From Thecamonas trahens ATCC 50062 (lineage: Eukaryota > Protista > Apusomonadida), in assembly GCF_000142905.1 (NCBI RefSeq), contig NW_013657654.1:124001-188000 (forward strand): a stretch of 64,000 nucleotides of DNA, written 5' to 3'. Under the pieces are notes generated by a model. That model saw only the letters and a program-made list of their open reading frames with translations, made no database searches and had not been told where the DNA came from. The position numbers and the translations under genes were made by a program. Below, piece after piece: positions 16,824 to 43,900 of this stretch; the stretch's first letter is position 1, and each line of letters begins with the position of its first letter.

Positions 16824-18222
16824 TCAGAGAACTCGGAACGAGAGCTGCGGGGCGGGCGAGGGATACGTCGACGCATGGTTGTGGATCTCCCACGGCGTGG
16901 CGTCGCATTGGACCTCGACCGCCTGCATCACGGCTGCAGTGGCGGCTACAAGCTCAAGATGGGCCACCCGCGCGCCAAGACACATGCGCGGGCCAACAGA
17001 GAACCCGTCGCGCATCAGCGGGTGATGGATGAGCGCAGACTTGTCGATGTTGGAGCTGAGGAAGCGCTCAGGCCGGAAGAGTTCTGGACTCTCGACATGC
17101 TGCGGGTCGTGAGCGACGCCGGTTGGGAAAACGCGAGCCAGGTACTGGCCGGGAGCTCAAGGGCCTTGCCAGATCCCAGCACCACCTCTGTCGCCTCGTC
17201 CAGCATACGGACAAACATAAAGGCGGTTGGCGTGAGGCGATGCACCTCGCGCTGCACGGCCTTGAGGTAGTGCAGCCGACGCACATGGCCGCGGGAAAGC
17301 TCATCGCTGCCGACGACAGCGGCAATCTCGGCCCGCAGCGTGGCCTGCGCCTCGGGGTTGCTACCGAGATGGATGAGGGTCCAGTGGAGCGTCGACGCCA
17401 CCGTCTCAAACCCGGCCATCAACAGGCCGGGCATGTTGGCGGCAACAGCATCGGCGTCGATCGCGCCAGACTCGACCAGGTCGTGGGCATAGGAGAAGCC
17501 GTAGGCGGGCGGGGCGCCGAGAGCGCGAGCCACATCGGCCTTGCTATGCTCGACCATAAACTGAAGCGAAGCCTGCCAGTCGCGCCAGAGTCTGGTCCGC
17601 ATCGTTGCGTGTTTCTTGCCCAGCGGACTCATCAGCATGCCCGACGCACACTCCATGGATCGGACTGTCGCCGCCAGCAGCGGATGCATGCCGCCGTCGA
17701 CCGGGCGCGGCAACGGCGCGCCAAGCACCGCTCCGCACACCATGTCGAACGAGAGCTGCTGGAGCCAGCGATGCAAGTCGATGCGGCCACAACTCATTGC
17801 CAGCTCCTTGGCTGCGCGCCTCGCCACACGATCGACCGATGATGCATACCTGGCGGCAGCCTGGGGCGAGAGCAGCGTCCGCTGCATGGCGGTCCGAGTC
17901 GCCTGCCAGGTGTCGGTGCCAAACGCCATGGCTATCTCACGGACTCCGCGCCTTGCCCTCTTCTCAAAAAGGCATGCAGCATCCAAAGCGAGTCTGTAGC
18001 GCCTGTGGGCCATGGCCCTGCCGCGGCATGGACCTGGGCCCAGACCCTTGGGTCGAACACCACCACCGTCTCCTCGCCGAGGCCGCCGAGGCTCACCACC
18101 TCGCCCCATCGGGCGTACATCTTGCGGAGCATGGGCACCATCCGACTCGAACCGCCCTCCTTGGCCACCCACCATGCGTTGCCGAGCAGAGGCAGCCGCA
18201 GCGGGCCTGGGATGGGTGGCAT
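16824..18222 (-). CDS. Cytochrome P450; two 1-nt undercalls (17966-17970, 17128-17131); start uncertain
   Basis: PGPLRLPLLGN, WQATR, AGFETVAST (I-helix), EVHR (ExxR), FRPERF and the heme motif FSVGPRMCLG, spread over three frames joined by adding one T at each site. Confidence 0.9.
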
Positions 18223-18646: not shown

Positions 18647-19049
18647 TCACAGCGGCGGAAGCGAGACCGACTCTAGCATGTGACGATCGAGCGAGTCGCC
18701 GACCTGCGGCTGTGCAGCACCAGCGCCAGCCATGTTCATGAACGCCTGGCAGACCACCAGGTAGGCAGCCTGATAGCTGTGCAGCGCCGCGCAGTTTGAC
18801 CGGAACCGCTGAACCTCGCTCTCCAGTCGTTCCAGCTCTCCGTTGAGACCTACCCAGAGTGGATGTGAGTGGAGGGGAAGGGGGGGGGGGGGGGGGGGGG
18901 GGCAGTACGGAGTACCGGGGNNNNNNNNNNNNNNNNNNNNNNNNNNNNNNNNNNNNNNNNNNNNNNNNNNNNNNNNNNNNNNNNNNNNNNNNNNNNNNNN
19001 NNNNNNNNNNNNNNNNNNNNCCCCACCACACACACACACACACACAAAC

Positions 19050-19085
<36 letters not shown>

Positions 19086-19109
19086 CCACGTACGGTTCAA
19101 CTGGTCCAT
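18647..19109 (-). CDS. Small (~72 aa) helical protein; exons 19109-19094 and 18849-18647
   Basis: GTACGT donor and TAG acceptor are phase-compatible: MDQLN-R-LNGELERLESEVQRFRSNCAALHSYQAAYLVVCQAFMNM...PPL*. The intron contains a gap. Confidence 0.6.
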
Positions 19110-19277
19110 CTCCTGTTACAAGCAAGTCAAGTGGTTGCCTCACCCGCACCCGCGCCTGCCCGCCAACCCCCCCCCAACCCCAACCCCCCCAACCCCCCCC
19201 CCCAACCCCCCTCTCCCCCCCCCCCTCCCCTCCCTCCCCTACCCCATCCCGCCCCACTTCACCCTCCAAGAGCCACC

Positions 19278-22200
19278 ATGAGCAACGCCCCGACCTTCAA
19301 ACTCCTTCTTGTGGGAGATGGAGGGACAGGCAAGACTGCCTTCCTCAAGGCCATCAACTCCCTTGCCTTTGAGACCAAGTACATTGGTATGCAATCCCCC
19401 TCCCTCCCCCATCTCCTCACCCATCCCCATCCCCATCCCCTTTGTATGCCCAGGCATGTATGCCTGCCTTTCTTTCGGTCACCCTTCTGTCACGCACCTT
19501 GCCACCACCACACCAAGTCGCCTTCCATTGCACCACCACACACACATACACGCACACACGCACACACACATGCACATGCACATACAAACAAACATGCACA
19601 CACTCACATATACCCCACACACACCACACCACACCATCCGCCCCGCATGTAGCCACACTTGGTGTCGAGGTGGATGAGGTCAGGCTGGCGACTTCGTCCG
19701 GCCCGCTGGTGTTCAACGTGTGGGATACGGCCGGACAGGAGAAATTTGGTGGCCTCCGCGATGGGTACTACATCCAGGGCCAAGCGGCGGTGATTTTTGC
19801 TGATGCCTCGTCGAGGAGTTCGGTCAAACATGCAAGGACTTCATGGCTTCGGGATGTGGTCCGAGTCTGTGATGGCATCCCCAAGGTCTTCGTCTTTAAC
19901 AAGACAGACGTGCCCGGTGGTGAGGCCAGGCACGTGGACAAGTTTGATGCTGTCTTTGGGCTCTCGGTCAAGGCCGCGGTGGCGAACAACGACTACGCGT
20001 CGCTCAAGGCTCCTTTCCTCTTCCTCGCCCGAAAGCTCACTGGCATTCGCGATCTCAACCTCGTCGGCGAGTCGTGGTCCAAGTCGGAGGTCCTTGTCGG
20101 GACCATTCTTCCCAGCGATGGCGCAACTAAGGACGAACATCCCAGCTCTGCCGATGCTTTCAGGGTCTCCAGCCCGCAGTCGAGTCCGCAAGCCCTTCCT
20201 CAGGGTGAGGTGTATGGTGATGGCGGCCCAGATGGGATCGACGACATTGTGTCGCCCGCGTCGGGCAACGGCGACAATTTCACTCTCGTTACGGGCTCCA
20301 AGACAAAGTCTGCATCGTCAGGCGGCTTCAAGTTTGGATCTCCCAACGCCGCTGCGCCTAAACCGTCTGGCGGCTTCAAGTTTGGATCGCCCGACGCCGC
20401 TGCGCCTGCATCGTCAGGCGGCTTCAAGTTTGGATCGCCCAACGCCGCCGCACCTGAACCGTCAGGCGGCTTCAAGTTTGGATCGCCCAACGCCACTGCG
20501 CCTAAGCCGTCTGGCGGCTTCAAGTTTGGATCGCCCGACGCCGCTGCGCCTGCATCGTCAGGCGGCTTCAAGTTTGGATCGCCCAACGCCGCCGCACCTG
20601 AACCGTCAGGCGGCTTCAAGTTTGGATCGCCCAACGCCACTGCGCCTAAGCCGTCAGGCGGCTTCAAGTTCGGATCGCCCGACGCCGCTGCGCCTAAGCC
20701 GTCAGGCGGCTTCAAGTTTGGATCGCCCAACGCCGCTGCGCCTAAGCCGTCAGGCGGCTTCAAGTTCGGATCGCCCAACGCCACTGCGCCTAAACCGTAT
20801 AGCAACTTCAAGTTTGGATCGCCCAACAACTTGTCGCCTGGACAACCCAGACACACACCATCGGGACCTTGGAAGTGCCCTGCTTGCGAGGCCAACAACC
20901 CTGCCGACAACAACCACTGCAAACTCTGCACCACTCCGCGGGTCCGCGTGGATCCGCAGTCCAAGCTGGCAAACTGGGGCCCACCGGCCAAACCCAAGGC
21001 AAAAAAGCCGACCAAGACGACCAAGATGGCCGCAAAGAAGAAAACTGCAAAGGCGACAAAAAAAAGGCTGGCAATGGCAAGACCGCCGCGGTCTCGCTTG
21101 CCTCCATCGGCTACCCCGACCCTACTGATGACTCCGACGCCGAGCTGATTCTGGCCGAACAGCGCCAGCTGCTGCAGGAAGCCCCGCCGCCGCCCGCTGT
21201 CTCAGATTTCGAAGCCTACAAGGCCGGTCTGATGGCCCGCCTCGACGCCGAGGCTGCCCGCCGCGGATACACACCCGACGAGAGCGACCGCAAGGCCGTG
21301 CTCAAGCGGCTGCCGGCCAACCTGGGCCAGACAGCGTGGCGGACACAGATCAAGAAGGTACTTCGGCAAGTGCACTCTTGCACCAGCATCGGCACAAGTG
21401 CTGCCCAGCTTGTCCAGGACATCGTGGTGTCGTCGCTCGTCGACGTTGTCACCGCCACCCGTCAGCTGATGGCGAAGCGCGACGAACTCATCGCCAACTC
21501 GCTCGAGACCGACGAACGCTCCGCTGAACTCCCCGACGTCGTTGCTGCTATCCGCCTCGCTGTGCCGGGCGAGCTGGCCATGCACGGTACATCCGAAGCA
21601 ACCAGGGCCGTCATCAAGTTGAAGGCTGCCCAACCGCCAGCCACGCTACGAACCGCATCCACCGCCAGTGGTCTAGTCTTTTCGACCCTCATTACCCGCT
21701 CCGGCATTGCCAAGCGGTTCGGGAGCTCGGTCCTCTCTCTCCCTGATGGAAGCCCTGCGTTTTCTGTCGAGGCCCTCGTCGCCCTTACCGCATTCACCGA
21801 GTACATCACCGCCGAGATCCTCGAGCTGAGTGGTAACGCCGCCCGCGACAACCGCCGTGCCCGTATCAACGAGCGCCACGTTCTTCTCTCCATTTCCTGC
21901 GATGAGGAGCTGAGCAATCACTTCCGCAGCGGCATCATCGCCCGCGGCGGCGTTTTGCCGCACATTCATGTCCGCCTCTTGCCTGTCCACGGCGGCGCGA
22001 ACAACCGCGACATGGAAGAGAATCGGCTCGTCGATGCTGCCCTCGCTACCGCCGGCTCGAGCGGTTCCACCTATCGCCCAGGTACCCTGGCTCTCCGCGA
22101 GATCCGCAGCGCGCAAAAGTCCACCGACCTCGCCATTGCTCCAGACATGTTCCAGGCCGTGGTCCGGGCGTTCTCCGCGATGTCGCTGGCGCTGACATGG

Positions 22201-22376
22201 GCATCTCCGATGAAGCTTACGCAGCCCTGCAGCACGCAGCCGAGGCCCATGTCGTCGAGCTCTTTCACCTCGCCAACGTTGTCGCCATTCACCGCGACTC
22301 GACTCTTGTCGAGCCCAAGGACTTGCAACTCACGAAGCGCATCCAGACAGCGAGCCGTCGCCACTTTTACGCCTAG
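19278..22376 (+). CDS. Fusion protein: Ran-like GTPase, 11 FxFG repeats, RanBP2 zinc finger, H2B-H2A-H3 histone folds (~944 aa); intron 19387-19652; undercalls at 21058-21065 and 22175-22176
   Basis: Ran: FKLLLVGDGGTGKT, YI|ATLGVEV, WDTAGQEKFGGLRDGYYIQ, NKTD, PFLFLARKL. Repeats: GGFKFGSP. Zinc finger: WKCPACEANNPADNNHCKLC. H2B: KKVLRQVH...PGELAMHGTSE. H2A: EYITAEILELSGNAARDN...DEEL...GGVLPHI. H3: YRPGTLALREIR...AIH...PKDLQL. Each domain call is strong; a single polypeptide depends on the A8-to-A9 repair. Confidence 0.8.
20318..20824 (+). repeat. 48-bp coding tandem repeat (SGGFKFGSPxAxAPxx), 11 FKFG motifs
   Basis: Seen directly. Units 2-4 and 5-7 form a 144-bp higher-order duplication. Confidence 0.95.
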
Positions 22377-25314: not shown

Positions 25315-26991
25315 ATGGCTCCCGTTTCCTTGCGAGATCGCGTCGGCCAGCGGCAGAGCCCAGGATGGCATTTGGAAGGTCTTGCGCTTCGACGACAGCA
25401 GGCCAGCGCAGCGGACCCCTCACCGCCCACAAGCAAAGCCCTCAGACACACCACTTCGACCGTCGCAGAGCAACAAGGGATGGAAGGCGACGGAAGCGAA
25501 GACCCGGAGGAGCTACGTGCGCAGGTGGAGGTGCTACAGAGCCTGCTAGATCGAAGTCTGGAGGTTGTGGAGGCCATGCTGGGGGAGGCCGAGGTGGCGG
25601 CGGCAAAGGGACGGCGGCGTGGCGGCGAGGTGTCTCGGCCGCGGGACGCACGGGATCTGGCGCACTCATTGGTCTCCTTCCGCAAGCGGCTGCGGGCGGA
25701 GGAGGGCATGCTGGATCGGCTACGGACGGGTCTCATTCCGCTCACAGCCAACAGGGTCAAGTCATCCAATCTCCACGCCCTCTCGGCCATCCTGGCCACC
25801 GCACGCAAGCTCGATGGCCTCGTCAGGCTGGGCGGATCCTTCAAGTACGGCGCCAAGGCCAAGGTCTACGTCGATGCGGTGGTCAAGACTCACTCGGCTG
25901 TCGAGTGGCTCAAGGTCAAGGTCACTCCACCAGTCCCCTTTCACAACATGTACGCCGGCCATGGCCGCGCCTCGTCGTCGTCCATGATCGATCAGGCCCG
26001 CCACCTCCTCGACGCTGCCGCCGAGCACCCACATGGCTTTACCATTCCGGCTGTCGTCTACGTCTTTGTCGGTGGCGTCTCCATCTCGGTCGCCGCAGAC
26101 CTGGAGGCGCTTGGCATTGTTGTTCGCGGCGAGCGGGTCGATCTCGGCCCGCTCGATGGTGTCGCCCACGCCGCTGCCCCGTCACCGTTCATCTGCCCGT
26201 CGACGCTCGCTTCGTTTGGCCTGCTTGACAGCCCGGCCGGCCCGCTCGTCTCGGCGCCAGCTACCACCGTCACCGAGGCCGAGCTGGCTGATCTCATGGC
26301 CGGCGGCAAGATCATCGAGGACGCGCAGGGCAATCGGTATGTTGTCGAGACGATCGAGGAGTATGAGTACGAGTACGACGAGTATGACGAGCCCGAAGGC
26401 AATGACAATGGGGACGTGGTTGGTGCGGCGGCAAGCACGCCGCCGGCCGACAGCAGCGCCGAGATGCTCAATCTGGACGTCTCCGCAATCCTTGCCTATG
26501 TCTCGGACCTCTGCCAGCCTGGCGGCGCCGAGACCGAGTTTGACGACCCGCTCATTGCCAAGCAAGCTGCCAGCGAGCGACAGCAGCGGCAGCTGCCGCT
26601 AATGGAACGGATGATGGCCGGCAAGCGGCTGGTGGTCTGCGAGACCGCACTCGCCTCACTCCAGGCCATCCTCGACACCGTGGCTGGGCCCGGCGAGCGC
26701 GCCCGTGCCGAGGCGCTCCTCGCCAACGTCGCCATTGTTCCCGACGAGCTTTCCGAACGGATGGCGAGCCTCCGCCCGACGCTCCGCATCAAGCCCCGCG
26801 CCCGGGTGGTGTTTGGAGTCGGCGACGCACTGGGCGTCCCGACGCTCACCGCCAACAACGGCTTTGTCCGTGCCGCTGCTCAGCAAGGCTACAACTTTAA
26901 GGCCATTGTCATCATGGCCCGCGCCCTCACCGAGAGCCGCCGCCTCGAGCAGGCCGGCCTTACGCCAGACCTGGATACCGGCTGCGCATAA
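25315..26991 (+). CDS. UPF0415 / C7orf25 (DUF1308) family protein; start may be 25480
   Basis: [13 protein letters not shown]...[47 protein letters not shown]. Confidence 0.85.
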
Positions 26992-29676
26992 AGTCATCAT
27001 CGCCGCTCGACGCCGGCGGCAGCGACGGGTAGAGAGACGGCGCCGCCGGCGCGGCTGCAGACACTGCAGGTTGCGGTGCCGGACGCCGCCCGCCGGTGTT
27101 CCCATGCGAGTCGCTGCTGTACGATCCGCCGCCAACTGGTGCCGACGTGCCCTTGGGCGTCGAGCACATCGAGCACGCGAGCGCGCCGGGGCTGTTGTCA
27201 AAGGTGCAGACCGAGCACGACCAGGTCGGGCCCGACGGCTGCGATGGCACGGATGGCGGCCGCGGCGACGGCCGCGGCGACGGCTGCCGCGGCGCTGCCG
27301 GCGACGGAGTTGCTGTCCTGCCTGAGCGCGCCGAGCCGCACATGGCACACGATTCGCCGCCCGAGTTGGCAAAGGTACATGCCGAGCACGACCACGAGCC
27401 TCCGCCGCCTGATGCTGGGGCCGAGGGTGTCACTGTGGCCCACGGTGGCGACAGCGAGCTCGCTGCCGGAGGTGCAGACGCTGCTGGCGCAGCCGATGAC
27501 AACGACGACGAGCTTGGTGCCGCACCGCCCGACGCTGCGAGCAGTCGCGGGTCGACCCACGACGTCTCGCGGGTCGAGTGATTTGCGTAGTACGGCCGGC
27601 CAAAGTCTGTTGCACACTCCTCCCAGAACTCGGGCATGGGCTTGGAAGCGATGGCGAGGTGATTTCGGACGTGGATGCCGACGAGCTCGCGCATGCGGTC
27701 AGCATCGGCCCGCGAACCCGCCAAGAAGCAGGTGGTAATCTTCTCATCAGCCTTGCCGTCCTTGCGGATCGAGATGCCAAACGCAGCTTTGCCCTTGTGC
27801 TCCTCCACCCGGTAGGCGTCGATCCAACTGATCGGGTAGTGGACCGGCGTCTTGGACCGGAACGACGAGTTGGGGATGACCGTCACACCCGATGGCGAAA
27901 TCTCCAGCACCACCGATGCCGCCACCCACTTGTTTGGCAGCGAGGCTGGAAACTTGACTGCCTCGGGCACGTGCAGCGAGAGGCTCGCCTGGCTCATCGA
28001 GCTAGAGAACGAGGTAGCAAACGGCGAGGTGGCTGATGCTGTCGATGTCGCTGTCCCGTGGTTGTCCGGCACGTCGCCGTCGGCCTGCCGTGCCACAAGC
28101 TCAATCATGGCAGCCTCGAGCACCGATGCGTGGGTGCAGTTGTTGACCGTGTCGCGGAGCTGTGGATAGGACCACTCTGAGATGGTAGCAAGCGGCGGGT
28201 GGCAGTCCGCCTCGTTGCCCATGTCAAACAGGGTACCGTCTTCGAACGCGTCCGGCGCCGGATTGTCGGACGACGAGGATGACGACGAGGACGACGAGGA
28301 CCGCTGCCGCGAGTTCGGCTCGCTGTACGGCATGTGACTCGGATAGTGGGATGGATATGGGCTCGGCATGTCGACGCCCGGGTACGAGGTGGCGTAGGGT
28401 GCATGGGCCGATACCGGCGCTGGCGCCGGCGGGGCGGTTGCCGGCGGCAGTGACGAAATCCGCCGATTTTCGTCGATGAGCTTGAGCATCTCCTGCTCCA
28501 TCTGCGCCCGCTCCGAGAGCCTCAGCTGCTCGAGCTCTTCACGCTCCTGCTTGCGCAGCTGCTCCAGGTGCTGGGCGTACGCTGCGAGCTCGGCAAGCTG
28601 TGCCTGGGTTTTGGACTGTACGGCCCGCATCTGCGCGTCATACCACGCCTGCGCCTCCATCTGGGCCTGGACTTGGTTGGCCTGCGCCTGCTCCAGCTGC
28701 TTCTCATACTGCGCCCGCGCCTGTGCCTCGGCCTGGGTGTGGGCATGCGCCTGTGCCAGCTGCTCCTGATACTGCGCATGTGCCTGCGCTTGCGCCGCTG
28801 CCTGATCGGCCTGCGCCCGCATCATCTGCTCTTTGTACGCAGCCTCGACTTGTGCAGCTGCCTGCGCAGCTGCATGTTCAGCTTGTGCCCTTGCCTGCGC
28901 CTCTGCATGTGCCCGTGCCTGCGCCTCTGCATGTGCCCGTGCCTGCGCTTCTGCCTGCGCCCGTACCTGCGCTTCTGCCTGCGCCCGTGCCTGCGCCTCT
29001 GCCTGTGCCCGTGCCTGCGCCTCTGCCTGTGCCCGTGCCTGTGCCTCTGCCTGCGCCCGTGCCTGCGCCTCTGCCTGTGCCCGTGCCTGCGCCTCTGCCT
29101 GTGCCCGTGCCTGCGCCTCTGCCTGTGCCCGTGCCTGCGCCTCTGCCTGTGGCGTTCATCTGGGCCTCGATTTGGGCGTACTCGTGCTGGACGACCTGCC
29201 CATACAGCGCCTGCGACCTGCCCATACAGCGCCTGCGACTGATCGGTGGCGGCCTTCTGAGCCTCCGCCACCCTAGCATCGTACGCCTGTTTGGCAATCT
29301 CAGTCGGCATGGCCGAAGCAAGGTGGTGCGAGTACTCGGCCTGCGCCTCGGCCATGGCCGTGCGCAGCACGTTCTCGTACAGCGCCTGGGCTTGTCCACG
29401 AGCAGTCTCCACCGCCTGTGCCTGTGCCTGTGCCTGTGCTGCCACCAGCCGAGCCTCAAACGATCCATCATCCGCCGGGGCACCTGCTGGTGGAGCCTGT
29501 GCCTGCACGTGAGCCATACCGGGGTGACCAGCCTGTGCTGCTTGTCCAGCTTGCGACCCTTGCCCGTGCGGACCTCCTCCTCCACCCGCAGCAGCAGCGT
29601 CAGCCAGCATCTGCTTCTGCGCCTGCATGAGCTGCTGCTGCATAAGCAACAGCTTCTCCTGCTCACTACCCGACAT
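26960..29676 (-). CDS. Adaptor protein: Q/A-rich coiled coil, PH/PTB-like domain, WW domain, two NZF zinc fingers; frame breaks at 29196-29239 and ~29150
   Basis: WW: [35 protein letters not shown]: [10 protein letters not shown]...CAMC and [10 protein letters not shown]...CSMC. The N-terminal join is inferred. Confidence 0.75.
28886..29150 (-). repeat. 24-bp coding repeat (AQAEAQAR), about 11 copies
   Basis: Seen directly: GCCTGCGCCTCTGCCTGTGCCCGT units on the + strand. Confidence 0.9.
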
Positions 29677-40939: not shown

Positions 40940-43900
40940 TCAGATCGAGAGCTGCGTGTAGCCCGACGTGTCCGAGCTCATTCGCGGCTTGCCCATCCGC
41001 AGCTTGGCCGAGTACGCCTGGATGAGCGCCGGCAGCGAGTCGTAGAACGTGTGGCCCTGGTCGCCCGTGTAGCCGCGGCCAGGCGCAGAGTACAGCTTGG
41101 ACTGGATAACCGCGCCACGCGAGTCGATGTACGCCACCACAAAGCCGCCGGACGTCGACTCAGAGACACGGACCAGGAACTCGCCCGGCGCCGCGTTGGT
41201 CAGCACCCGCGCCGTCTGATCCTTGTTGATAAATCCATGGAACCAGAGGTTCGACATCAGTTCGGTGCAGATCCGCACGCTCTCATGCAGCGGTCCGAAC
41301 CACTGCAATGCATACTTGAGCGAATCGAGCGTGAGCTGTCCAAGCCCGCGCGGGTTGAACAGCTCGTTGAGATAGCCCTGCTGCTCGGCTGTGAGTGACA
41401 GCCCAAGGTACGCCTGAAGCGCAGAGAGGAAGTTTGGCATCAGCACCGCCTGCGCCTGAACCCCAAAATACCGTTCCCAGAACGCCTCGGGCGAGAGGTG
41501 CTCCGGCTCAGAGAGCGCGAGCGAGTACACGTCCGCCGGCGACGAAAACGCTGGCTGCTGCCCCAGCGCCACTCCACCGGGGCCAACCGCGTGGTTTGCG
41601 GTGCCCGCCGTCGGTGATGCGCCCGCAAACCCTGCCGCAAACCCATTTGCAGGCGTGTAGCTCGACGTCGGCGTCGTCTGCGGCGAAAACCCTGGATGGT
41701 AGCCCGGTAAGGCCGACGATGCCGGCGGCGGGCCGGCCACAGACACTCCGCCGTGCATCCCGCCCGCTCCCGGGTACCCACTCGGCGCGCCACCGTGGTG
41801 GCCAGGGTAGCCCCCACCGCCCACAGACTGCATCGGGTTCATCCCGCCCACAGACTGCATTGGGTTCATCCCCATGGTCGCCATCCCGGTCGGCGACGGC
41901 GTCGCACTCGCACCCATCGCCGACGGTCCCCCGCCCATCGCAGGCGTCGGTGATGGGACCGCAACCTCGTCCACAGATGCAATCCACGGGTGCTGCAGCA
42001 GATCCGCCGCCGACGGCCGCTGGTTTGGATCGCGCCGGAAACAGAGGTTGAGAAAGTCGATGCCCGCCGCAGAGAGCCCCTCCGGGTACTTTGGTGAGTC
42101 GTTCGACTTGCCGATCTTAAACAGCGCCGTAACCGGCGAGAACTCGGACCACGGCGGCCGCCCGGTAAGCAGCTCGATGGCCACACACCCGACAGACCAG
42201 ATGTCACACCGGGAGTTGTACGGCTGCTGCAGAACAACCTCGGGCGCCATAAAAACGGCGTGCCCTTGAACGAGTGCAGCGCCGCCGACGACATCGTCCC
42301 TGACTCGATGAGCGGCTTGGACGCCCCAAAGTCTGTGAGCTTGATGATGGTCTGCTGCGCCGGTGCAATAAGGATGTTGGCGCACTTGATGTCGCGGTGG
42401 ACAATGCCGTTCTCGTGGAGGTACTCTAGCCCCAGCAGAACTTGCTTGAGGTATGATCGCGTCACACGCTCCGACACCGGGTACTTGTGGATGAGCTTGG
42501 CCAGCGAGCCGCCGGGCACGTACTCGAGGAAAATGTTGAGCACAGCTTGCCCGTCCTCGTTGGTCGCCCGCTCAGTCGCAATGTACCGAACAATGTGCTT
42601 GTGCGAGAGCTCCTGCAGAATCGCAATCTCGCCCTCCACCTCCAGCAGCTCTTCCTGGTTTGACTCGGAGATGTTGTCGAGCACCACCTGCTTGACCGCC
42701 ATCAGCTCCGCCGTCGCCTCGTTCATGCCCAGGTACACCTTGCCGAACGCGCCCGACCCCAGAAGCTCGCGCTTCTGCCAGTGGATCGTCCCTGACGGCC
42801 CGTACGTCGGTCGGCCCTGCTGCGACATCCGCATCGCCGCCGTCGACCGCACCCCCAGCTTCTGCCCACGCGTCGTCGCGCCCATCACAGGCATTGACGC
42901 GTTGAGTCCAGACGCCGGCACACTCGCCGGCACACTCGCACGCGGCGAGCCGCTGGACCCGCCCATTGTCGGCTGCGACGACACCCGCGGAAAGCCAGCG
43001 TGCCCAGGCACCAGCGAGTCCGGCGTTCCCGGCACGGCACCGCCCGACGTCCCAGACCCGGACCCAGACGCGCACTGGACAATGAGATCGATCTTCTTCT
43101 TGCTCGCGTGTTCGTCAAGCATGTACGCAAAGTCGTCTGCGTTGATCACATCAATCAGCGTCCCGTCCGCCCGCTGCCATGAAAGGTACACCGCCGTCTT
43201 GTACGCCTCGTCCATCTGCGTCTGTAGCTTGGTGAACGGATCCGTCCTCTCGATGCGGAGCAGCTTGAACGCTCCTTTGAATTTGCACTTGAGCACCACT
43301 GTCGAGGAGACCACCGCTGGTTTTGCTCCCGCTGCGCTGCCGCGCCCGCCAGAACCACCTGAGGATGCCACCGCCACTGCCGCAGACGCAGCCCCGGCTG
43401 CCGTCAGCGAGGCGAGTCCAAGCGTGACCAGCGGCGGCGGCGGAAGCCGCACCGAAAGCGTCTCTGCCGAGAGCACATCCCGCGCCGTGTAGCCGCCAAA
43501 CACATACCCGGTCGAGTCAACCGCAGCACTCACCGCAAACGCTCGCCCAATCCCGGCCGCGTCTTCGTCTTCGCCCGACGCCGGCACCCACCCGGCAGAC
43601 GGTGCCTCGAGGTTGAGCGCCACCGCATTGCTTAGCAGCGCCACTGGCGACCGCCGCGCAGCGCTCAGACCGCCGTGCACCATCAGTGTCGAGCCGATGA
43701 GCACTCCAACGTGTCCGTATCGCGCCTCGGCGCTCACCTCCACCATCCGCCAATGGCCTGTCGCAAGATTGAGCACGCATGTGTCACCGAGCACTCCCTC
43801 GCTCGACGAGTACCCGCCGTGAACCACCAGGCACGGCACCCGCTCGCTCCCACCCGACCACATCGCAACCACCGCGTGCGCCCGCGGGCTCGGTGCACCC

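What the first reader, a model, noticed from the sequence alone, without database searches (positions are those of the whole stretch)
19278..22376. Ran GTPase - FG repeats - RanBP2 zinc finger - histone triplet in one predicted polypeptide
Seen: a spliced Ran-like G domain (19278-20065), 11 FKFG repeats (20318-20824), a RanBP2 zinc finger (20870-20941), a Lys-rich tail-like linker, then H2B, H2A and H3 folds ending at TAG 22374-22376, 1 bp from the stop of the convergent gene. Two one-base additions (A8 to A9 at 21058-21065, CC to CCC at 22175-22176) give one ~944-aa ORF; that is the same error type seen in conserved genes here. Known: FxFG repeats bind transport receptors, Nup153/Nup358-type zinc fingers bind Ran, and Ran is activated on nucleosomes by RCC1. 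I know of no protein that joins these modules. Inference: a chromatin-anchored nuclear-transport module, for example a pore-chromatin tether, a self-importing histone, or a local Ran-GTP source.
Basis: partly seen in the sequence, partly recalled or inferred. Interest (0 to 1): 0.96.

Follow-up and report, generated by a model that had tools for sequence, protein, structure and literature searches.

The report
Ran GTPase fused to histone triplet
One gene of the marine flagellate Thecamonas trahens, with unbroken counterparts in ocean metagenomes, puts a Ran-type transport GTPase, pore-like FG repeats and three core histones into a single protein, which suggests a nucleosome that carries its own nuclear-transport switch.

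Summary
Observation confirmed. The window is Thecamonas trahens ATCC 50062. At 19278-22376 (+) lie, in order, a spliced Ran-like G domain, 11 FKFG repeats, one Nup153-like RanBP2 zinc finger, a Lys-rich linker, and H2B, H2A and H3 folds, read in three frames. GenBank already holds a fused 893-aa model (XP_013757355.1) that hides both frame breaks behind artificial introns.

Three independent Tara Oceans contigs, probably from a T. trahens relative, encode the same order (without the zinc finger) as one uninterrupted ORF of 736-775 aa. It is collinear with the three window frames. Two other conserved genes in the window (a P450 and a kinase) lack one base in a short homopolymer in the same way, so the breaks are most likely assembly errors.

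The neighbours are cellular genes. The histone part groups with a T. trahens H2B-H2A doublet, not with quadruplet histone proteins of the kind described from giant viruses. AT-rich marine contigs carry other Ran-histone fusions: importin-alpha-like ARM-Ran-H2B-H2A, and a spliced FG-Ran-SAM-H2B-H2A-H4-H3. I found no paper describing any of them.

Function is inferred, not shown: a nucleosome-forming triplet that displays a tethered Ran switch and FG repeats, acting as a chromatin-bound dock for transport receptors.

The parts
19278..19386 (+). Exon 1: start codon and Ran P-loop (GDGGTGKT), ending in phase 1
   Evidence: Aligns to the N-terminus of the Tara ortholog and of Ran.
19387..19652 (+). 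Intron 1, 266 nt, GTATGC...TGTAG, CA-rich low complexity
   Evidence: Splicing restores the Ran switch I sequence. The annotated protein P0037 uses the same junction.
19653..20065 (+). Rest of the Ran-like G domain. Switch I Thr, DTAGQE, NKTD and SVK are present. The HRKK basic patch, the C-terminal helix and the acidic tail are absent.
   Evidence: Pfam Ras; PDB Ran E 1.8e-31; motif alignment.
20066..20315 (+). Ser/Pro/Asp-rich linker with no recognised domain
   Evidence: No Pfam hit. The equivalent stretch of the ortholog model is disordered, pLDDT about 30.
20316..20827 (+). Eleven FKFG (FxFG-type) repeats in 16-residue units, encoded by a 48-nt tandem repeat
   Evidence: Pfam Nucleoporin_FG scores only 21-24 bits against a cut-off of 32.2.
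20870..20941 (+). Single RanBP2-type zinc finger
   Evidence: Pfam 30.9 bits on a 46-aa stretch around the finger. The closest identifiable solved fingers are Ran-bound Nup153 fingers, 3gj8 and 7mo3.
20942..21066 (+). Lys-rich linker (29% Lys over 20942-21055) holding the A8 run 21058-21065, where the reading frame changes (break 1). The public model removes exactly this stretch as a 125-nt GT..AG intron.
   Evidence: The ortholog has a Lys-rich stretch at the same place inside its ORF.
21067..21261 (+). Conserved acidic and helical segment (GYP motif, acidic run, helices) before H2B. It lies in the second frame, upstream of that frame's first ATG (21232).
   Evidence: Alignment with the ortholog. 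No Met in this frame before 21232.
21262..21630 (+). H2B fold with an extra conserved N-terminal helix
21658..22026 (+). H2A fold with docking segment and H2A C-terminal motif. All six H2A acidic-patch residues are conserved.
   Evidence: Pfam Histone and Histone_H2A_C; alignment to solved single-chain H2B-H2A.
22078..22373 (+). H3 fold (alpha-N to alpha-3) with no H3 tail. It is interrupted by break 2.
22171..22178 (+). Break 2: one base is missing within alpha-1 of H3 (CC at 22175-22176 is one possible site). Too tight for an intron.
   Evidence: The public model bridges it with a 26-nt 'intron' at 22119-22144 that deletes conserved H3 residues.
22374..22376 (+). Stop codon TAG, 1 bp from the stop of the convergent F-box/LRR gene

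Best explanation
This is one real nuclear gene of Thecamonas trahens, conserved in a marine metagenome organism that is probably a relative.

Its product is a single protein of about 944 aa: a Ran-derived GTPase, a disordered arm with FxFG repeats, one Nup153-like zinc finger, a Lys-rich H2B-tail-like stretch, an acidic helical segment, then H2B, H2A and H3 folds. The two frame breaks in the window are most likely one-base assembly errors.

Inferred mechanism:
1. H2B and H2A fold onto each other within the chain. The H3 fold pairs with an H4 encoded elsewhere, so two copies can build a nucleosome-like particle.
2. From the H2B end, the flexible arm holds out a Ran switch that has lost its auto-inhibitory C-terminal tail.
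3. On chromatin, RCC1 docked on the conserved acidic patch would keep this tethered Ran in the GTP form.
4. Ran-GTP and the neighbouring FG repeats would together capture importin-beta-type receptors (or NTF2 in the GDP form).
5. That would mark the chromatin as a fixed site for receptor docking, cargo release, or attachment to pores or the envelope.

Shown: the sequence anatomy, its conservation, and the cellular context. Predicted: the fold. Inferred: assembly with H4, the nucleotide cycle, and receptor binding.
For: Identity and context:
- Organism and public fused model.
- Neighbours are ordinary cellular genes: ThrRS, kinases, P450, RFC, F-box, HAUS4, CTC1, NPL4, Bud13, zuotin.

One polypeptide:
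- Uninterrupted orthologs P0137, P0146 and P0157 come from three Tara assemblies.
- Their alignment follows the window frames in order.
- The segment just after break 1 is conserved in the second frame, upstream of that frame's first ATG.
- The same one-base homopolymer deficit splits a P450 and a kinase inside conserved motifs.

The contigs probably come from a relative:
- A Tara contig with similar GC (60%, against 62% for the ortholog contigs) shares PHD/FHA - doublet - AsnS synteny with T. trahens.

Ran part:
- G1-G4 and the catalytic Gln are intact.
- T. trahens and the ortholog share derived losses (basic patch, C-terminal helix, acidic tail) and a shared insert.
- Their Ran domains are sisters, SH-aLRT 89.

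Histone part:
- The best solved matches are engineered single-chain H2B-H2A proteins.
- The AF2 model of the ortholog has histone pLDDT above 90 and superposes on H2B-H2A dimers at TM about 0.9.
- All eight acidic-patch residues are kept.
- The histone part forms a clade with the ortholog (95) and then with the T. trahens doublet (93).

Functional link:
- Other Ran-histone fusions exist in AT-rich marine contigs. Their Ran domain sits among canonical Rans, so they arose separately.
Against: - There is no expression, read-level or protein evidence for T. trahens. No independent assembly of the locus turned up in the protein collections.
- Break 2 sits in a run of only two bases, which is a less typical error site.
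- Several DNA-contacting basic residues of H3 alpha-1 and L1 are replaced in both orthologs, so stable DNA wrapping is not assured.
- No H4 partner lies in the window.
- The zinc finger is missing from the ortholog, and it carries Glu-Ala where the Ran-bound Nup153 fingers carry Cys-Val or Leu-Val.
- The ortholog's Ran domain was modelled poorly, pLDDT 45-80.
- Both Ran branches are long, so their sister position could be an artefact.
- dN/dS among the Tara variants rests on fewer than 20 differences.
Confidence: 0.5

Rival explanations
1. Self-import and deposition cassette. The N-terminal half does not act on chromatin. It is a built-in transport and chaperone device for an awkward cargo. 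Ran-GDP plus FxFG repeats would recruit NTF2, or the Lys-rich stretch would recruit importins, to carry the triplet through the pore. In the nucleus, GTP loading of the fused Ran would release the carrier next to DNA. The arm might then be idle or cleaved off.
For: - The Lys-rich, NLS-like linker sits beside the FG repeats and Ran.
- One fusion elsewhere adds an importin-alpha-like ARM domain in front of Ran-H2B-H2A.
- Another starts with FG-type motifs.
- From general knowledge, not tested here: the Ran switch II Phe used by NTF2 is conserved, and importins are known to act as histone chaperones.
Against: - Canonical histones need no such device.
- The fused Ran lacks the C-terminal tail that stabilises the GDP form, which is the form NTF2 imports.
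- The acidic patch and the nucleosome-type surfaces are conserved, as expected for a protein that stays in chromatin.
- The ARM junction differs between two contigs, so it may be specific to a haplotype or to an assembly.
Confidence: 0.22
2. The frame breaks are real. In this strain the locus is a decaying gene, or two products: a Ran-FG-zinc-finger protein ending at 21148, and a histone doublet with a truncated H3 starting at ATG 21232.
For: - Taken at face value, the assembly has a stop at 21146-21148 and a shift in H3.
- No independent sequence of the locus was found.
- Break 2 is in a two-base run.
Against: - All three frames stay open and conserved up to the shared stop.
- Conserved coding sequence lies in the second frame upstream of ATG 21232.
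- Identical one-base deficits interrupt a P450 and a kinase within 25 kb.
- The ortholog is intact in three assemblies.
- Break 1 could also be removed by the 125-nt GT..AG interval used in the public model, which still gives a fusion.
Confidence: 0.12
3. A giant-virus gene that became resident in the host genome. H2B-H2A-H3 triplets are a hallmark of Nucleocytoviricota, some of which also encode Ran. The protein would serve, or once served, viral genome packaging or hijacking of host transport.
For: - The triplet order with a separate H4 is so far described from giant-virus metagenomes (PMC9145170, PMC11222145).
- Many triplets with other N-terminal additions exist in metagenomes.
Against: - Flanking genes are cellular, and no viral hallmark gene was seen among the large ORFs scanned.
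- GC matches the genome.
- The gene has a spliceosomal intron.
- Its histone part groups with a T. trahens doublet that lies in conserved cellular synteny, apart from the quadruplet-type proteins.
- Nothing related was found in IMG/VR.
- An ancient transfer in either direction is not excluded.
Confidence: 0.1
4. Artefact: a chimeric assembly or a merged gene model of neighbouring Ran, nucleoporin and histone genes.
For: - The public model contains two artificial introns.
- The scaffold has gaps nearby.
Against: - There is no gap inside the gene.
- The same order occurs in single stop-free ORFs in three independent assemblies of another organism.
Confidence: 0.03

Closest known systems
H2B-H2A-H3 histone triplets (with H4 singlets) of giant-virus metagenomes (Talbert et al. 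2022, PMC9145170; Irwin and Richards 2024, PMC11222145)
   Same: Same order of the three folds in one chain, canonical tails missing, and H4 not included. The related viral doublets and quadruplets form nucleosome-like particles.
   Different: Here the gene is cellular and spliced, lies among housekeeping genes, and carries about 650 aa of Ran, FG repeats and a zinc finger in front. In the tree it groups with a T. trahens doublet rather than with the quadruplet-type proteins. The viral origin of those comparison proteins was assumed, not checked.
Nup153 and Nup358/RanBP2 (nuclear-pore proteins with FxFG repeats and Ran-binding zinc fingers)
   Same: FxFG-type repeats sit next to a RanBP2-type finger. 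Ran-bound Nup153 fingers are the closest identifiable solved relatives of the finger.
   Different: No pore-anchoring domain was detected, and there is one finger instead of four to eight. The dipeptide after the second Cys is Glu-Ala, not Leu/Cys-Val. The protein carries Ran and histones itself. The ortholog lacks the finger.
Canonical Ran / Gsp1
   Same: About 50% identity to human Ran. The P-loop and switch II are identical, and the catalytic Gln, switch I Thr and NKxD are present.
   Different: It lacks the HRKK basic patch, the C-terminal helix and the acidic DEDDDL tail. It has a 6-residue insert after G5 and a long branch in the tree. It is a divergent extra copy, presumably beside a normal Ran gene. 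I did not check for that gene.
RCC1 on the nucleosome acidic patch producing Ran-GTP at chromatin (general knowledge)
   Same: It links Ran to H2A-H2B. All eight acidic-patch residues are conserved here, so the exchange factor could dock beside the tethered Ran.
   Different: In the known system Ran is free and diffusible. Here it would be covalently held on the histone. No RCC1 interaction was tested.
Histones with appended globular domains (macroH2A) and engineered single-chain H2B-H2A
   Same: A histone fold carries a large non-histone domain. H2B followed by H2A in one chain folds as a normal dimer, and these are the top PDB matches.
   Different: The appended parts here are a GTPase and FG repeats at the N-terminal side, and a third fold (H3) follows.
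Other Ran-histone fusions found here in AT-rich marine contigs (P0155/P0158/P0159; P0326)
   Same: A Ran domain lies directly upstream of H2B-H2A. One starts with FG-type motifs, and one has an importin-alpha-like ARM domain.
   Different: Their Ran domain is near-canonical and sits elsewhere in the tree. Their histone sets differ: a doublet, or H2B-H2A-H4-H3. One has SAM domains, and one has a degenerate switch II (WDFSGRE). They are undescribed and their organisms are unknown.

Membership tests
Ran family of small GTPases | Ras-like G domain with G1-G5 motifs and Ran-type switch II (DTAGQEKFGGLRDGYY) | tested here: met
   Pfam Ras. Every PDB hit at E <= 1e-10 is Ran or its yeast homologue Gsp1, best E 1.8e-31. 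G1 and switch II are identical to Ran, NKTD is present, and G5 is SVK instead of SAK.
Ran family of small GTPases | C-terminal extension (helix plus acidic DEDDDL) and the HRKK basic patch it binds | tested here: not met
   Both are absent in T. trahens and in the Tara ortholog. The chain continues into the linker.
Ran family of small GTPases | GTP binding and hydrolysis, regulated by RCC1 and RanGAP | not testable with these tools
   Only the residues can be read. The catalytic Gln and the switch I Thr are present.
Core histones H2B, H2A, H3 | Histone folds with family-specific motifs (H2A C-terminal motif, acidic patch, H3 alpha-N) | tested here: met
   Pfam Histone (three folds) and Histone_H2A_C. 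PDB alignment shows all acidic-patch residues kept. The H3 alpha-N motif YRPGT..LREIR is present.
Core histones H2B, H2A, H3 | Canonical N-terminal tails with their modification sites | tested here: not met
   The H3 tail is replaced by the linker from H2A. The H2A N-terminal tail is replaced by the linker from H2B. In front of H2B there is only a Lys-rich stretch.
Core histones H2B, H2A, H3 | Assembly into a DNA-wrapping particle with H4 | not testable with these tools
   The H2B-H2A part of the ortholog model matches solved dimers at TM about 0.9. Some H3 DNA-contact residues are replaced. No H4 gene lies in the window.
Giant-virus histone repeats (triplet type) | H2B-H2A-H3 in one chain | tested here: met
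Giant-virus histone repeats (triplet type) | Encoded in a Nucleocytoviricota genome or an integrated copy of one | tested here: not met
   Cellular neighbours, host-like GC and an intron. No relative in IMG/VR. Groups with the cellular doublet.
FG nucleoporins | Tandem FG (FxFG) repeats in a disordered region | tested here: met
   11 FKFG in 16-residue units. The Pfam Nucleoporin_FG score is below the cut-off, 21-24 bits against 32.2.
FG nucleoporins | A structured domain that anchors the protein in the pore scaffold | tested here: not met
   Apart from one sub-threshold Nucleoporin_FG match, the matches found are GTPase-type (Ras and related P-loop families), RanBP2-type zinc-finger and histone-fold families.
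RanBP2-type zinc fingers of the Ran-binding (Nup153/Nup358) class | W-x-C-x2-C-x3-N-x6-C-x2-C zinc ribbon | tested here: met
   Motif at 20870-20929. Pfam 30.9 bits against 27. The closest identifiable solved fingers are Nup153 fingers.
RanBP2-type zinc fingers of the Ran-binding (Nup153/Nup358) class | Ran-contacting residues after the second Cys (Leu/Cys-Val in the Nup153 fingers) | tested here: inconclusive
   The window has Glu-Ala at these positions. That these residues matter for binding is from my memory of the Nup153-Ran structures. Binding cannot be judged from sequence.

The most novel reading that the evidence does not exclude
Ran-histone fusions are a so far undescribed class of chromatin protein that arose at least twice in eukaryotes. 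They would form nucleosomes, or half-nucleosomes, with a covalently attached Ran switch and FG repeats. Particular chromatin would then carry its own fixed Ran-GTP signal and docking site for transport receptors, for example to seed pores or envelope, or to tie loci to pores, without relying on a diffusible Ran gradient.
Probability: 0.3. Interest if true: 0.92.

Novelty: new variant of a known kind. Interest (0 to 1): 0.82.

Why it matters
Ran-GTP production is coupled to chromatin in all eukaryotes, but only through RCC1 binding transiently to H2A-H2B. A natural protein that welds Ran, FG repeats and three core histones together would be a direct physical link between the nucleosome and the transport machinery. 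It would also be a ready-made tool for asking what a fixed Ran signal on chromatin does.

It shows that single-chain histone triplets, so far discussed as a giant-virus feature and used in arguments about the origin of nucleosomes, also exist as spliced cellular genes in a free-living protist lineage close to animals and fungi. They sit there beside a paralogous H2B-H2A doublet.

The recurrence of Ran next to H2B-H2A in unrelated marine eukaryote contigs argues for function rather than accident.

On the practical side, the public protein record is mis-modelled at two places and named only as Ran.

Tried and rejected
- Exact look-up of ten long window ORFs found none in the collection, so it did not identify the organism. 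The organism came from the Ran-piece search.
- A GC3 frame plot across the gene was too noisy to place the frame switches.
- Scans of IMG/VR with P0159 and P0157 found no relatives.
- Looking for a third frameshift example around the NPL4 gene and in other ORFs gave no Pfam hits.
- No H4-like sequence was found in the window by tblastn.
- Paper searches by accession, by Thecamonas/apusomonad plus histone/Ran, and by Ran-like plus histone fold found nothing on this protein. The supplements of the chromatin-evolution study that grew T. trahens also hold nothing. Recent viral-histone papers do not mention Ran fusions.
- I considered programmed frameshifting or transcriptional slippage at A8. I set it aside because break 2 has no slippery site and other genes show the same defect.
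- I ran no further search on hunting for independent T. trahens reads. The clusters of both T. trahens histone-repeat proteins have a single member, so such data seem absent from the collection.
- The joined 944-aa model was never searched or folded as one sequence. Exon 1, the second-exon frame and the two later frames were searched separately, by reference. In two local trees and one local motif alignment the pieces shared one row, with X at the split codon or at the break.
- No contig handled here was taken to be human.
Full report
**What is in the sequence.**
The window is GC-rich (65%) scaffold sequence with five N runs. On the + strand, an ATG at 19278 opens a 109-nt exon that encodes the Ran P-loop. 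A 266-nt GT..AG intron follows (19387-19652). A second exon then continues the Ran switch I exactly in phase.

Pfam finds the following:
- Ras on the second exon (E 6.5e-15).
- A RanBP2-type zinc ribbon, 30.9 bits against a cut-off of 27 on a 46-aa stretch around the finger.
- A sub-threshold Nucleoporin_FG match.
- In the next frame, two histone folds plus the H2A C-terminal motif.
- In the third frame, a further histone fold.

There are exactly 11 FKFG motifs (20327-20818), encoded by a 48-nt tandem repeat. The frame changes twice, each time as if one base were missing: near the A8 run at 21058-21065, and within 22171-22178. With two added bases the model is 944 codons.

**Whose gene it is, and what is already public.**
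The Ran-containing frame matches at 100% an 893-aa GenBank/UniProt protein of Thecamonas trahens ATCC 50062 (XP_013757355.1, KNC49871.1, A0A0L0DCM1). It is named only 'GTP-binding nuclear protein ran/tc4', and its precomputed Pfam list already holds Ras, zf-RanBP, Histone and Histone_H2A_C. So the fusion is in the databases.

That model bridges the two breaks with a 125-nt GT..AG 'intron' (20942-21066), which removes the Lys-rich linker. It also uses a 26-nt 'intron' (22119-22144), which deletes conserved H3 residues and reads ten codons in the wrong frame.

The large ORFs around the gene encode ordinary cellular proteins: ThrRS, a PDZ protein, kinases, a P450, an RFC subunit, an F-box/LRR protein, HAUS4, a DUF1308 protein, a WW-plus-zinc-finger protein, CTC1, NPL4, Bud13 and zuotin. 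This is not a viral island.

**Is it one polypeptide?**
The strongest evidence comes from elsewhere. Three Tara Oceans assemblies hold contigs (GC 62%) with one uninterrupted ORF of 736, 741 or 775 aa. Its order is: Ran-like domain, Gly-Phe-Gly repeats with Lys spacers, Lys-rich stretch, a GYP motif with an acidic run and helices, H2B, H2A, H3. The true start lies seven codons upstream of the called one, and there is no intron.

Aligned to the window, this protein follows the first frame up to the Lys-rich stretch, then the second frame, then the third. The conserved GYP/acidic segment lies in the second frame upstream of that frame's first ATG (21232). A separate histone gene starting there would therefore cut off conserved coding sequence.

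Break 2 falls inside alpha-1 of H3, where there is no room for an intron.

Two other genes in the window show the same defect inside conserved motifs:
- A P450 is split between its ExxR helix and its heme-binding loop at 17138-17158. Its two halves match Pfam p450 positions 81-350 and 365-447 in different frames.
- A kinase is split between DFG and APE at a T5 run, 42242-42264.

I therefore take both breaks as assembly errors. For break 1, a real intron at 20942-21066 would also keep the frame, so either way the product is fused. I recall that this assembly dates from the pyrosequencing era, which would fit homopolymer under-calls, but I could not verify that here. No independent sequence of the locus was found.

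**Relationship of the orthologs.**
A Tara contig of similar GC (60%) carries an H2B-H2A doublet flanked by a PHD/FHA gene and asparagine synthase. That is the same arrangement as the T. trahens doublet gene XP_013762701.1, at 55-65% amino-acid identity. A relative of T. trahens is therefore present in these waters. On GC content and histone grouping it is the likely source of the Ran-triplet contigs. No contig links the two loci, and the two loci's contigs came from different assemblies.

In a tree of concatenated histone folds:
- The window and the Tara triplet form a clade (SH-aLRT 95).
- Its sister is the pair of doublets (93).
- Both lie apart from the quadruplet-type proteins and from canonical histone arrays.

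The Ran domains of the window and the Tara protein are sisters (89, long branches). They share derived traits: loss of the HRKK basic patch, a six-residue insert after G5, and loss of the C-terminal helix and acidic tail. The fusion thus predates their split. The Tara variants differ mainly in FG-repeat number. The few substitutions give dN/dS of 0.15-0.49, which is weak evidence.

A search of 1.8 billion representative proteins found no third cluster with both Ran and a triplet among the top 150 hits.

**The parts.**
- *Ran.* The domain is about 50% identical to human Ran. It has an identical P-loop and switch II, the catalytic Gln, the switch I Thr and NKTD.
- *Zinc finger.* Among solved structures, Nup153 fingers crystallised with Ran are its closest identifiable relatives (the top-scoring hit is a 3566-residue chain named only 'RanBP2-type zinc finger'). 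It carries Glu-Ala where those fingers have Cys/Leu-Val, and the ortholog has no finger at all.
- *Histones.* The histone part matches engineered single-chain H2B-H2A proteins best, and it keeps all six H2A and both H2B acidic-patch residues.
- *Structure model.* An AlphaFold model of the intact ortholog has pLDDT above 90 across the histone folds and a disordered FG/linker region. Its H2B-H2A part superposes on solved dimers at TM about 0.9.
- *H3.* The H3 fold keeps alpha-N and the His of the H3-H3 interface, but it has lost several basic DNA contacts in alpha-1 and L1.
- *H4.* No H4 gene lies in the window.

**Other Ran-histone fusions.**
AT-rich (35% GC) marine contigs encode two more architectures.
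- One is Ran, linker, H2B-H2A. In one contig it is preceded in the same ORF by an importin-alpha-like ARM domain (rice importin alpha, E 2.7e-14). Two contigs differ upstream of the Ran domain, so this junction needs confirmation.
- The other is a spliced gene. Exon 1 has FG-type motifs and ends inside the P-loop. A GTAAGT..AG intron restores GDGGVGKT. Then follow a Ran domain with a degenerate switch II, SAM domains, and H2B, H2A, H4 and H3 folds. Its neighbour encodes a JAB-plus-AP2 protein.

The Ran domain of the first, the only one placed in the Ran tree, sits among canonical Rans, far from the apusomonad pair, so these fusions arose separately. The second's Ran was cut out of that tree by the length filter; its C-terminal half is 78% identical to the first's. 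Many other H2B-H2A-H3 triplets with unrelated N-terminal additions (R3H, RING) also exist.

**How it most likely works.**
Shown: the anatomy, its conservation, and the cellular context. Predicted: the fold. Inferred: everything that follows.

The H2B-H2A pair should fold within the chain, and H3 should pair with H4. Two copies would give an octamer-like particle with two flexible arms leaving from the H2B N-terminal side. Each arm carries FG repeats and a tail-less Ran.

From general knowledge:
- RCC1 docks on the acidic patch.
- Ran without its C-terminal tail favours the receptor-binding state.
- Importin-beta-type receptors bind Ran-GTP and FG repeats on different surfaces.

Together these suggest a chromatin-fixed, high-avidity dock for transport receptors. 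Its role might be local cargo release, or attachment to pores or the envelope.

The main rival is that the N-terminal half serves import and deposition of the triplet itself. The ARM-containing fusion fits this rival particularly well. Real frameshifts (a decaying gene), a viral origin and an artefact are less likely, for the reasons given under each rival.

**Known or new.**
H2B-H2A-H3 triplets with separate H4 are described from giant-virus metagenomes (PMC9145170, PMC11222145). I found no paper that mentions a cellular triplet, a Ran-histone fusion, or this accession. I class it as a new variant of a known kind (histone-repeat proteins) with an unprecedented partner.

**Procedural note.**
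The joined spliced and frame-corrected model was not submitted to any search or fold; its pieces were searched apart, by reference. In local trees and one local alignment the pieces shared a row, with X at each junction.

Noticed in passing
window 17138-17158 (- strand): A cytochrome P450 gene is split between two frames inside the conserved stretch between the ExxR helix and the heme loop. One base seems to be missing in a CCC/GG run.
   Followed up: yes
window 42242-42264 (- strand): A Kelch-PB1-kinase-SH2 gene is split between DFG and APE at a T5 run, where a sixth T would restore GTPFFMAPEV. It is the same error type.
   Followed up: yes
L001:10001-10924 (T. trahens GL349434.1) and L006:2534-3322 (Tara): T. 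trahens has a separate 290-aa H2B-H2A doublet gene (XP_013762701.1, named histone H2A) with an acidic N-terminal extension. Its PHD/FHA and asparagine-synthase neighbours are conserved in a Tara contig.
   Followed up: partly
L004:150-3107; L003:811-2349: AT-rich marine contigs encode Ran-H2B-H2A. In L004 an importin-alpha-like ARM domain precedes it in the same ORF. L003 and L004 are 98% identical from the Ran P-loop onward but unrelated upstream.
   Followed up: partly
L008:5428-9696: A spliced gene encodes FG-type motifs, Ran (switch II degenerate, catalytic Gln replaced by Arg), SAM domains and an H2B-H2A-H4-H3 quadruplet. The intron splits the P-loop. The neighbouring gene encodes a JAB plus AP2 protein.
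   Followed up: partly
P0003 (Logan contig, 369 aa): Another architecture: ubiquitin-like domain, Gly/Phe-rich stretch, H2B-H2A doublet.
   Followed up: no
L002, L005, L007 (FG region): The Tara orthologs are 96-99% identical in DNA, but their FG-repeat regions differ in length (proteins of 736, 741 and 775 aa), so repeat number appears to vary in the population.
   Followed up: partly
window 26963-28825 (- strand): A second RanBP2-type zinc finger (36 bits) lies 4.6 kb downstream, in a WW-domain protein.
   Followed up: no
window 19027-19255: A CA microsatellite and long poly-C/CCCCT tracts lie just upstream of the start codon, next to a 100-N gap (18921-19020). The intron is also CA-rich.
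   Followed up: no
P0179, P0203 and others (representative search): Many metagenomic H2B-H2A-H3 triplets have long N-terminal extensions with other domains (R3H, RING) or none recognised. Their origin, viral or cellular, is unknown.
   Followed up: partly
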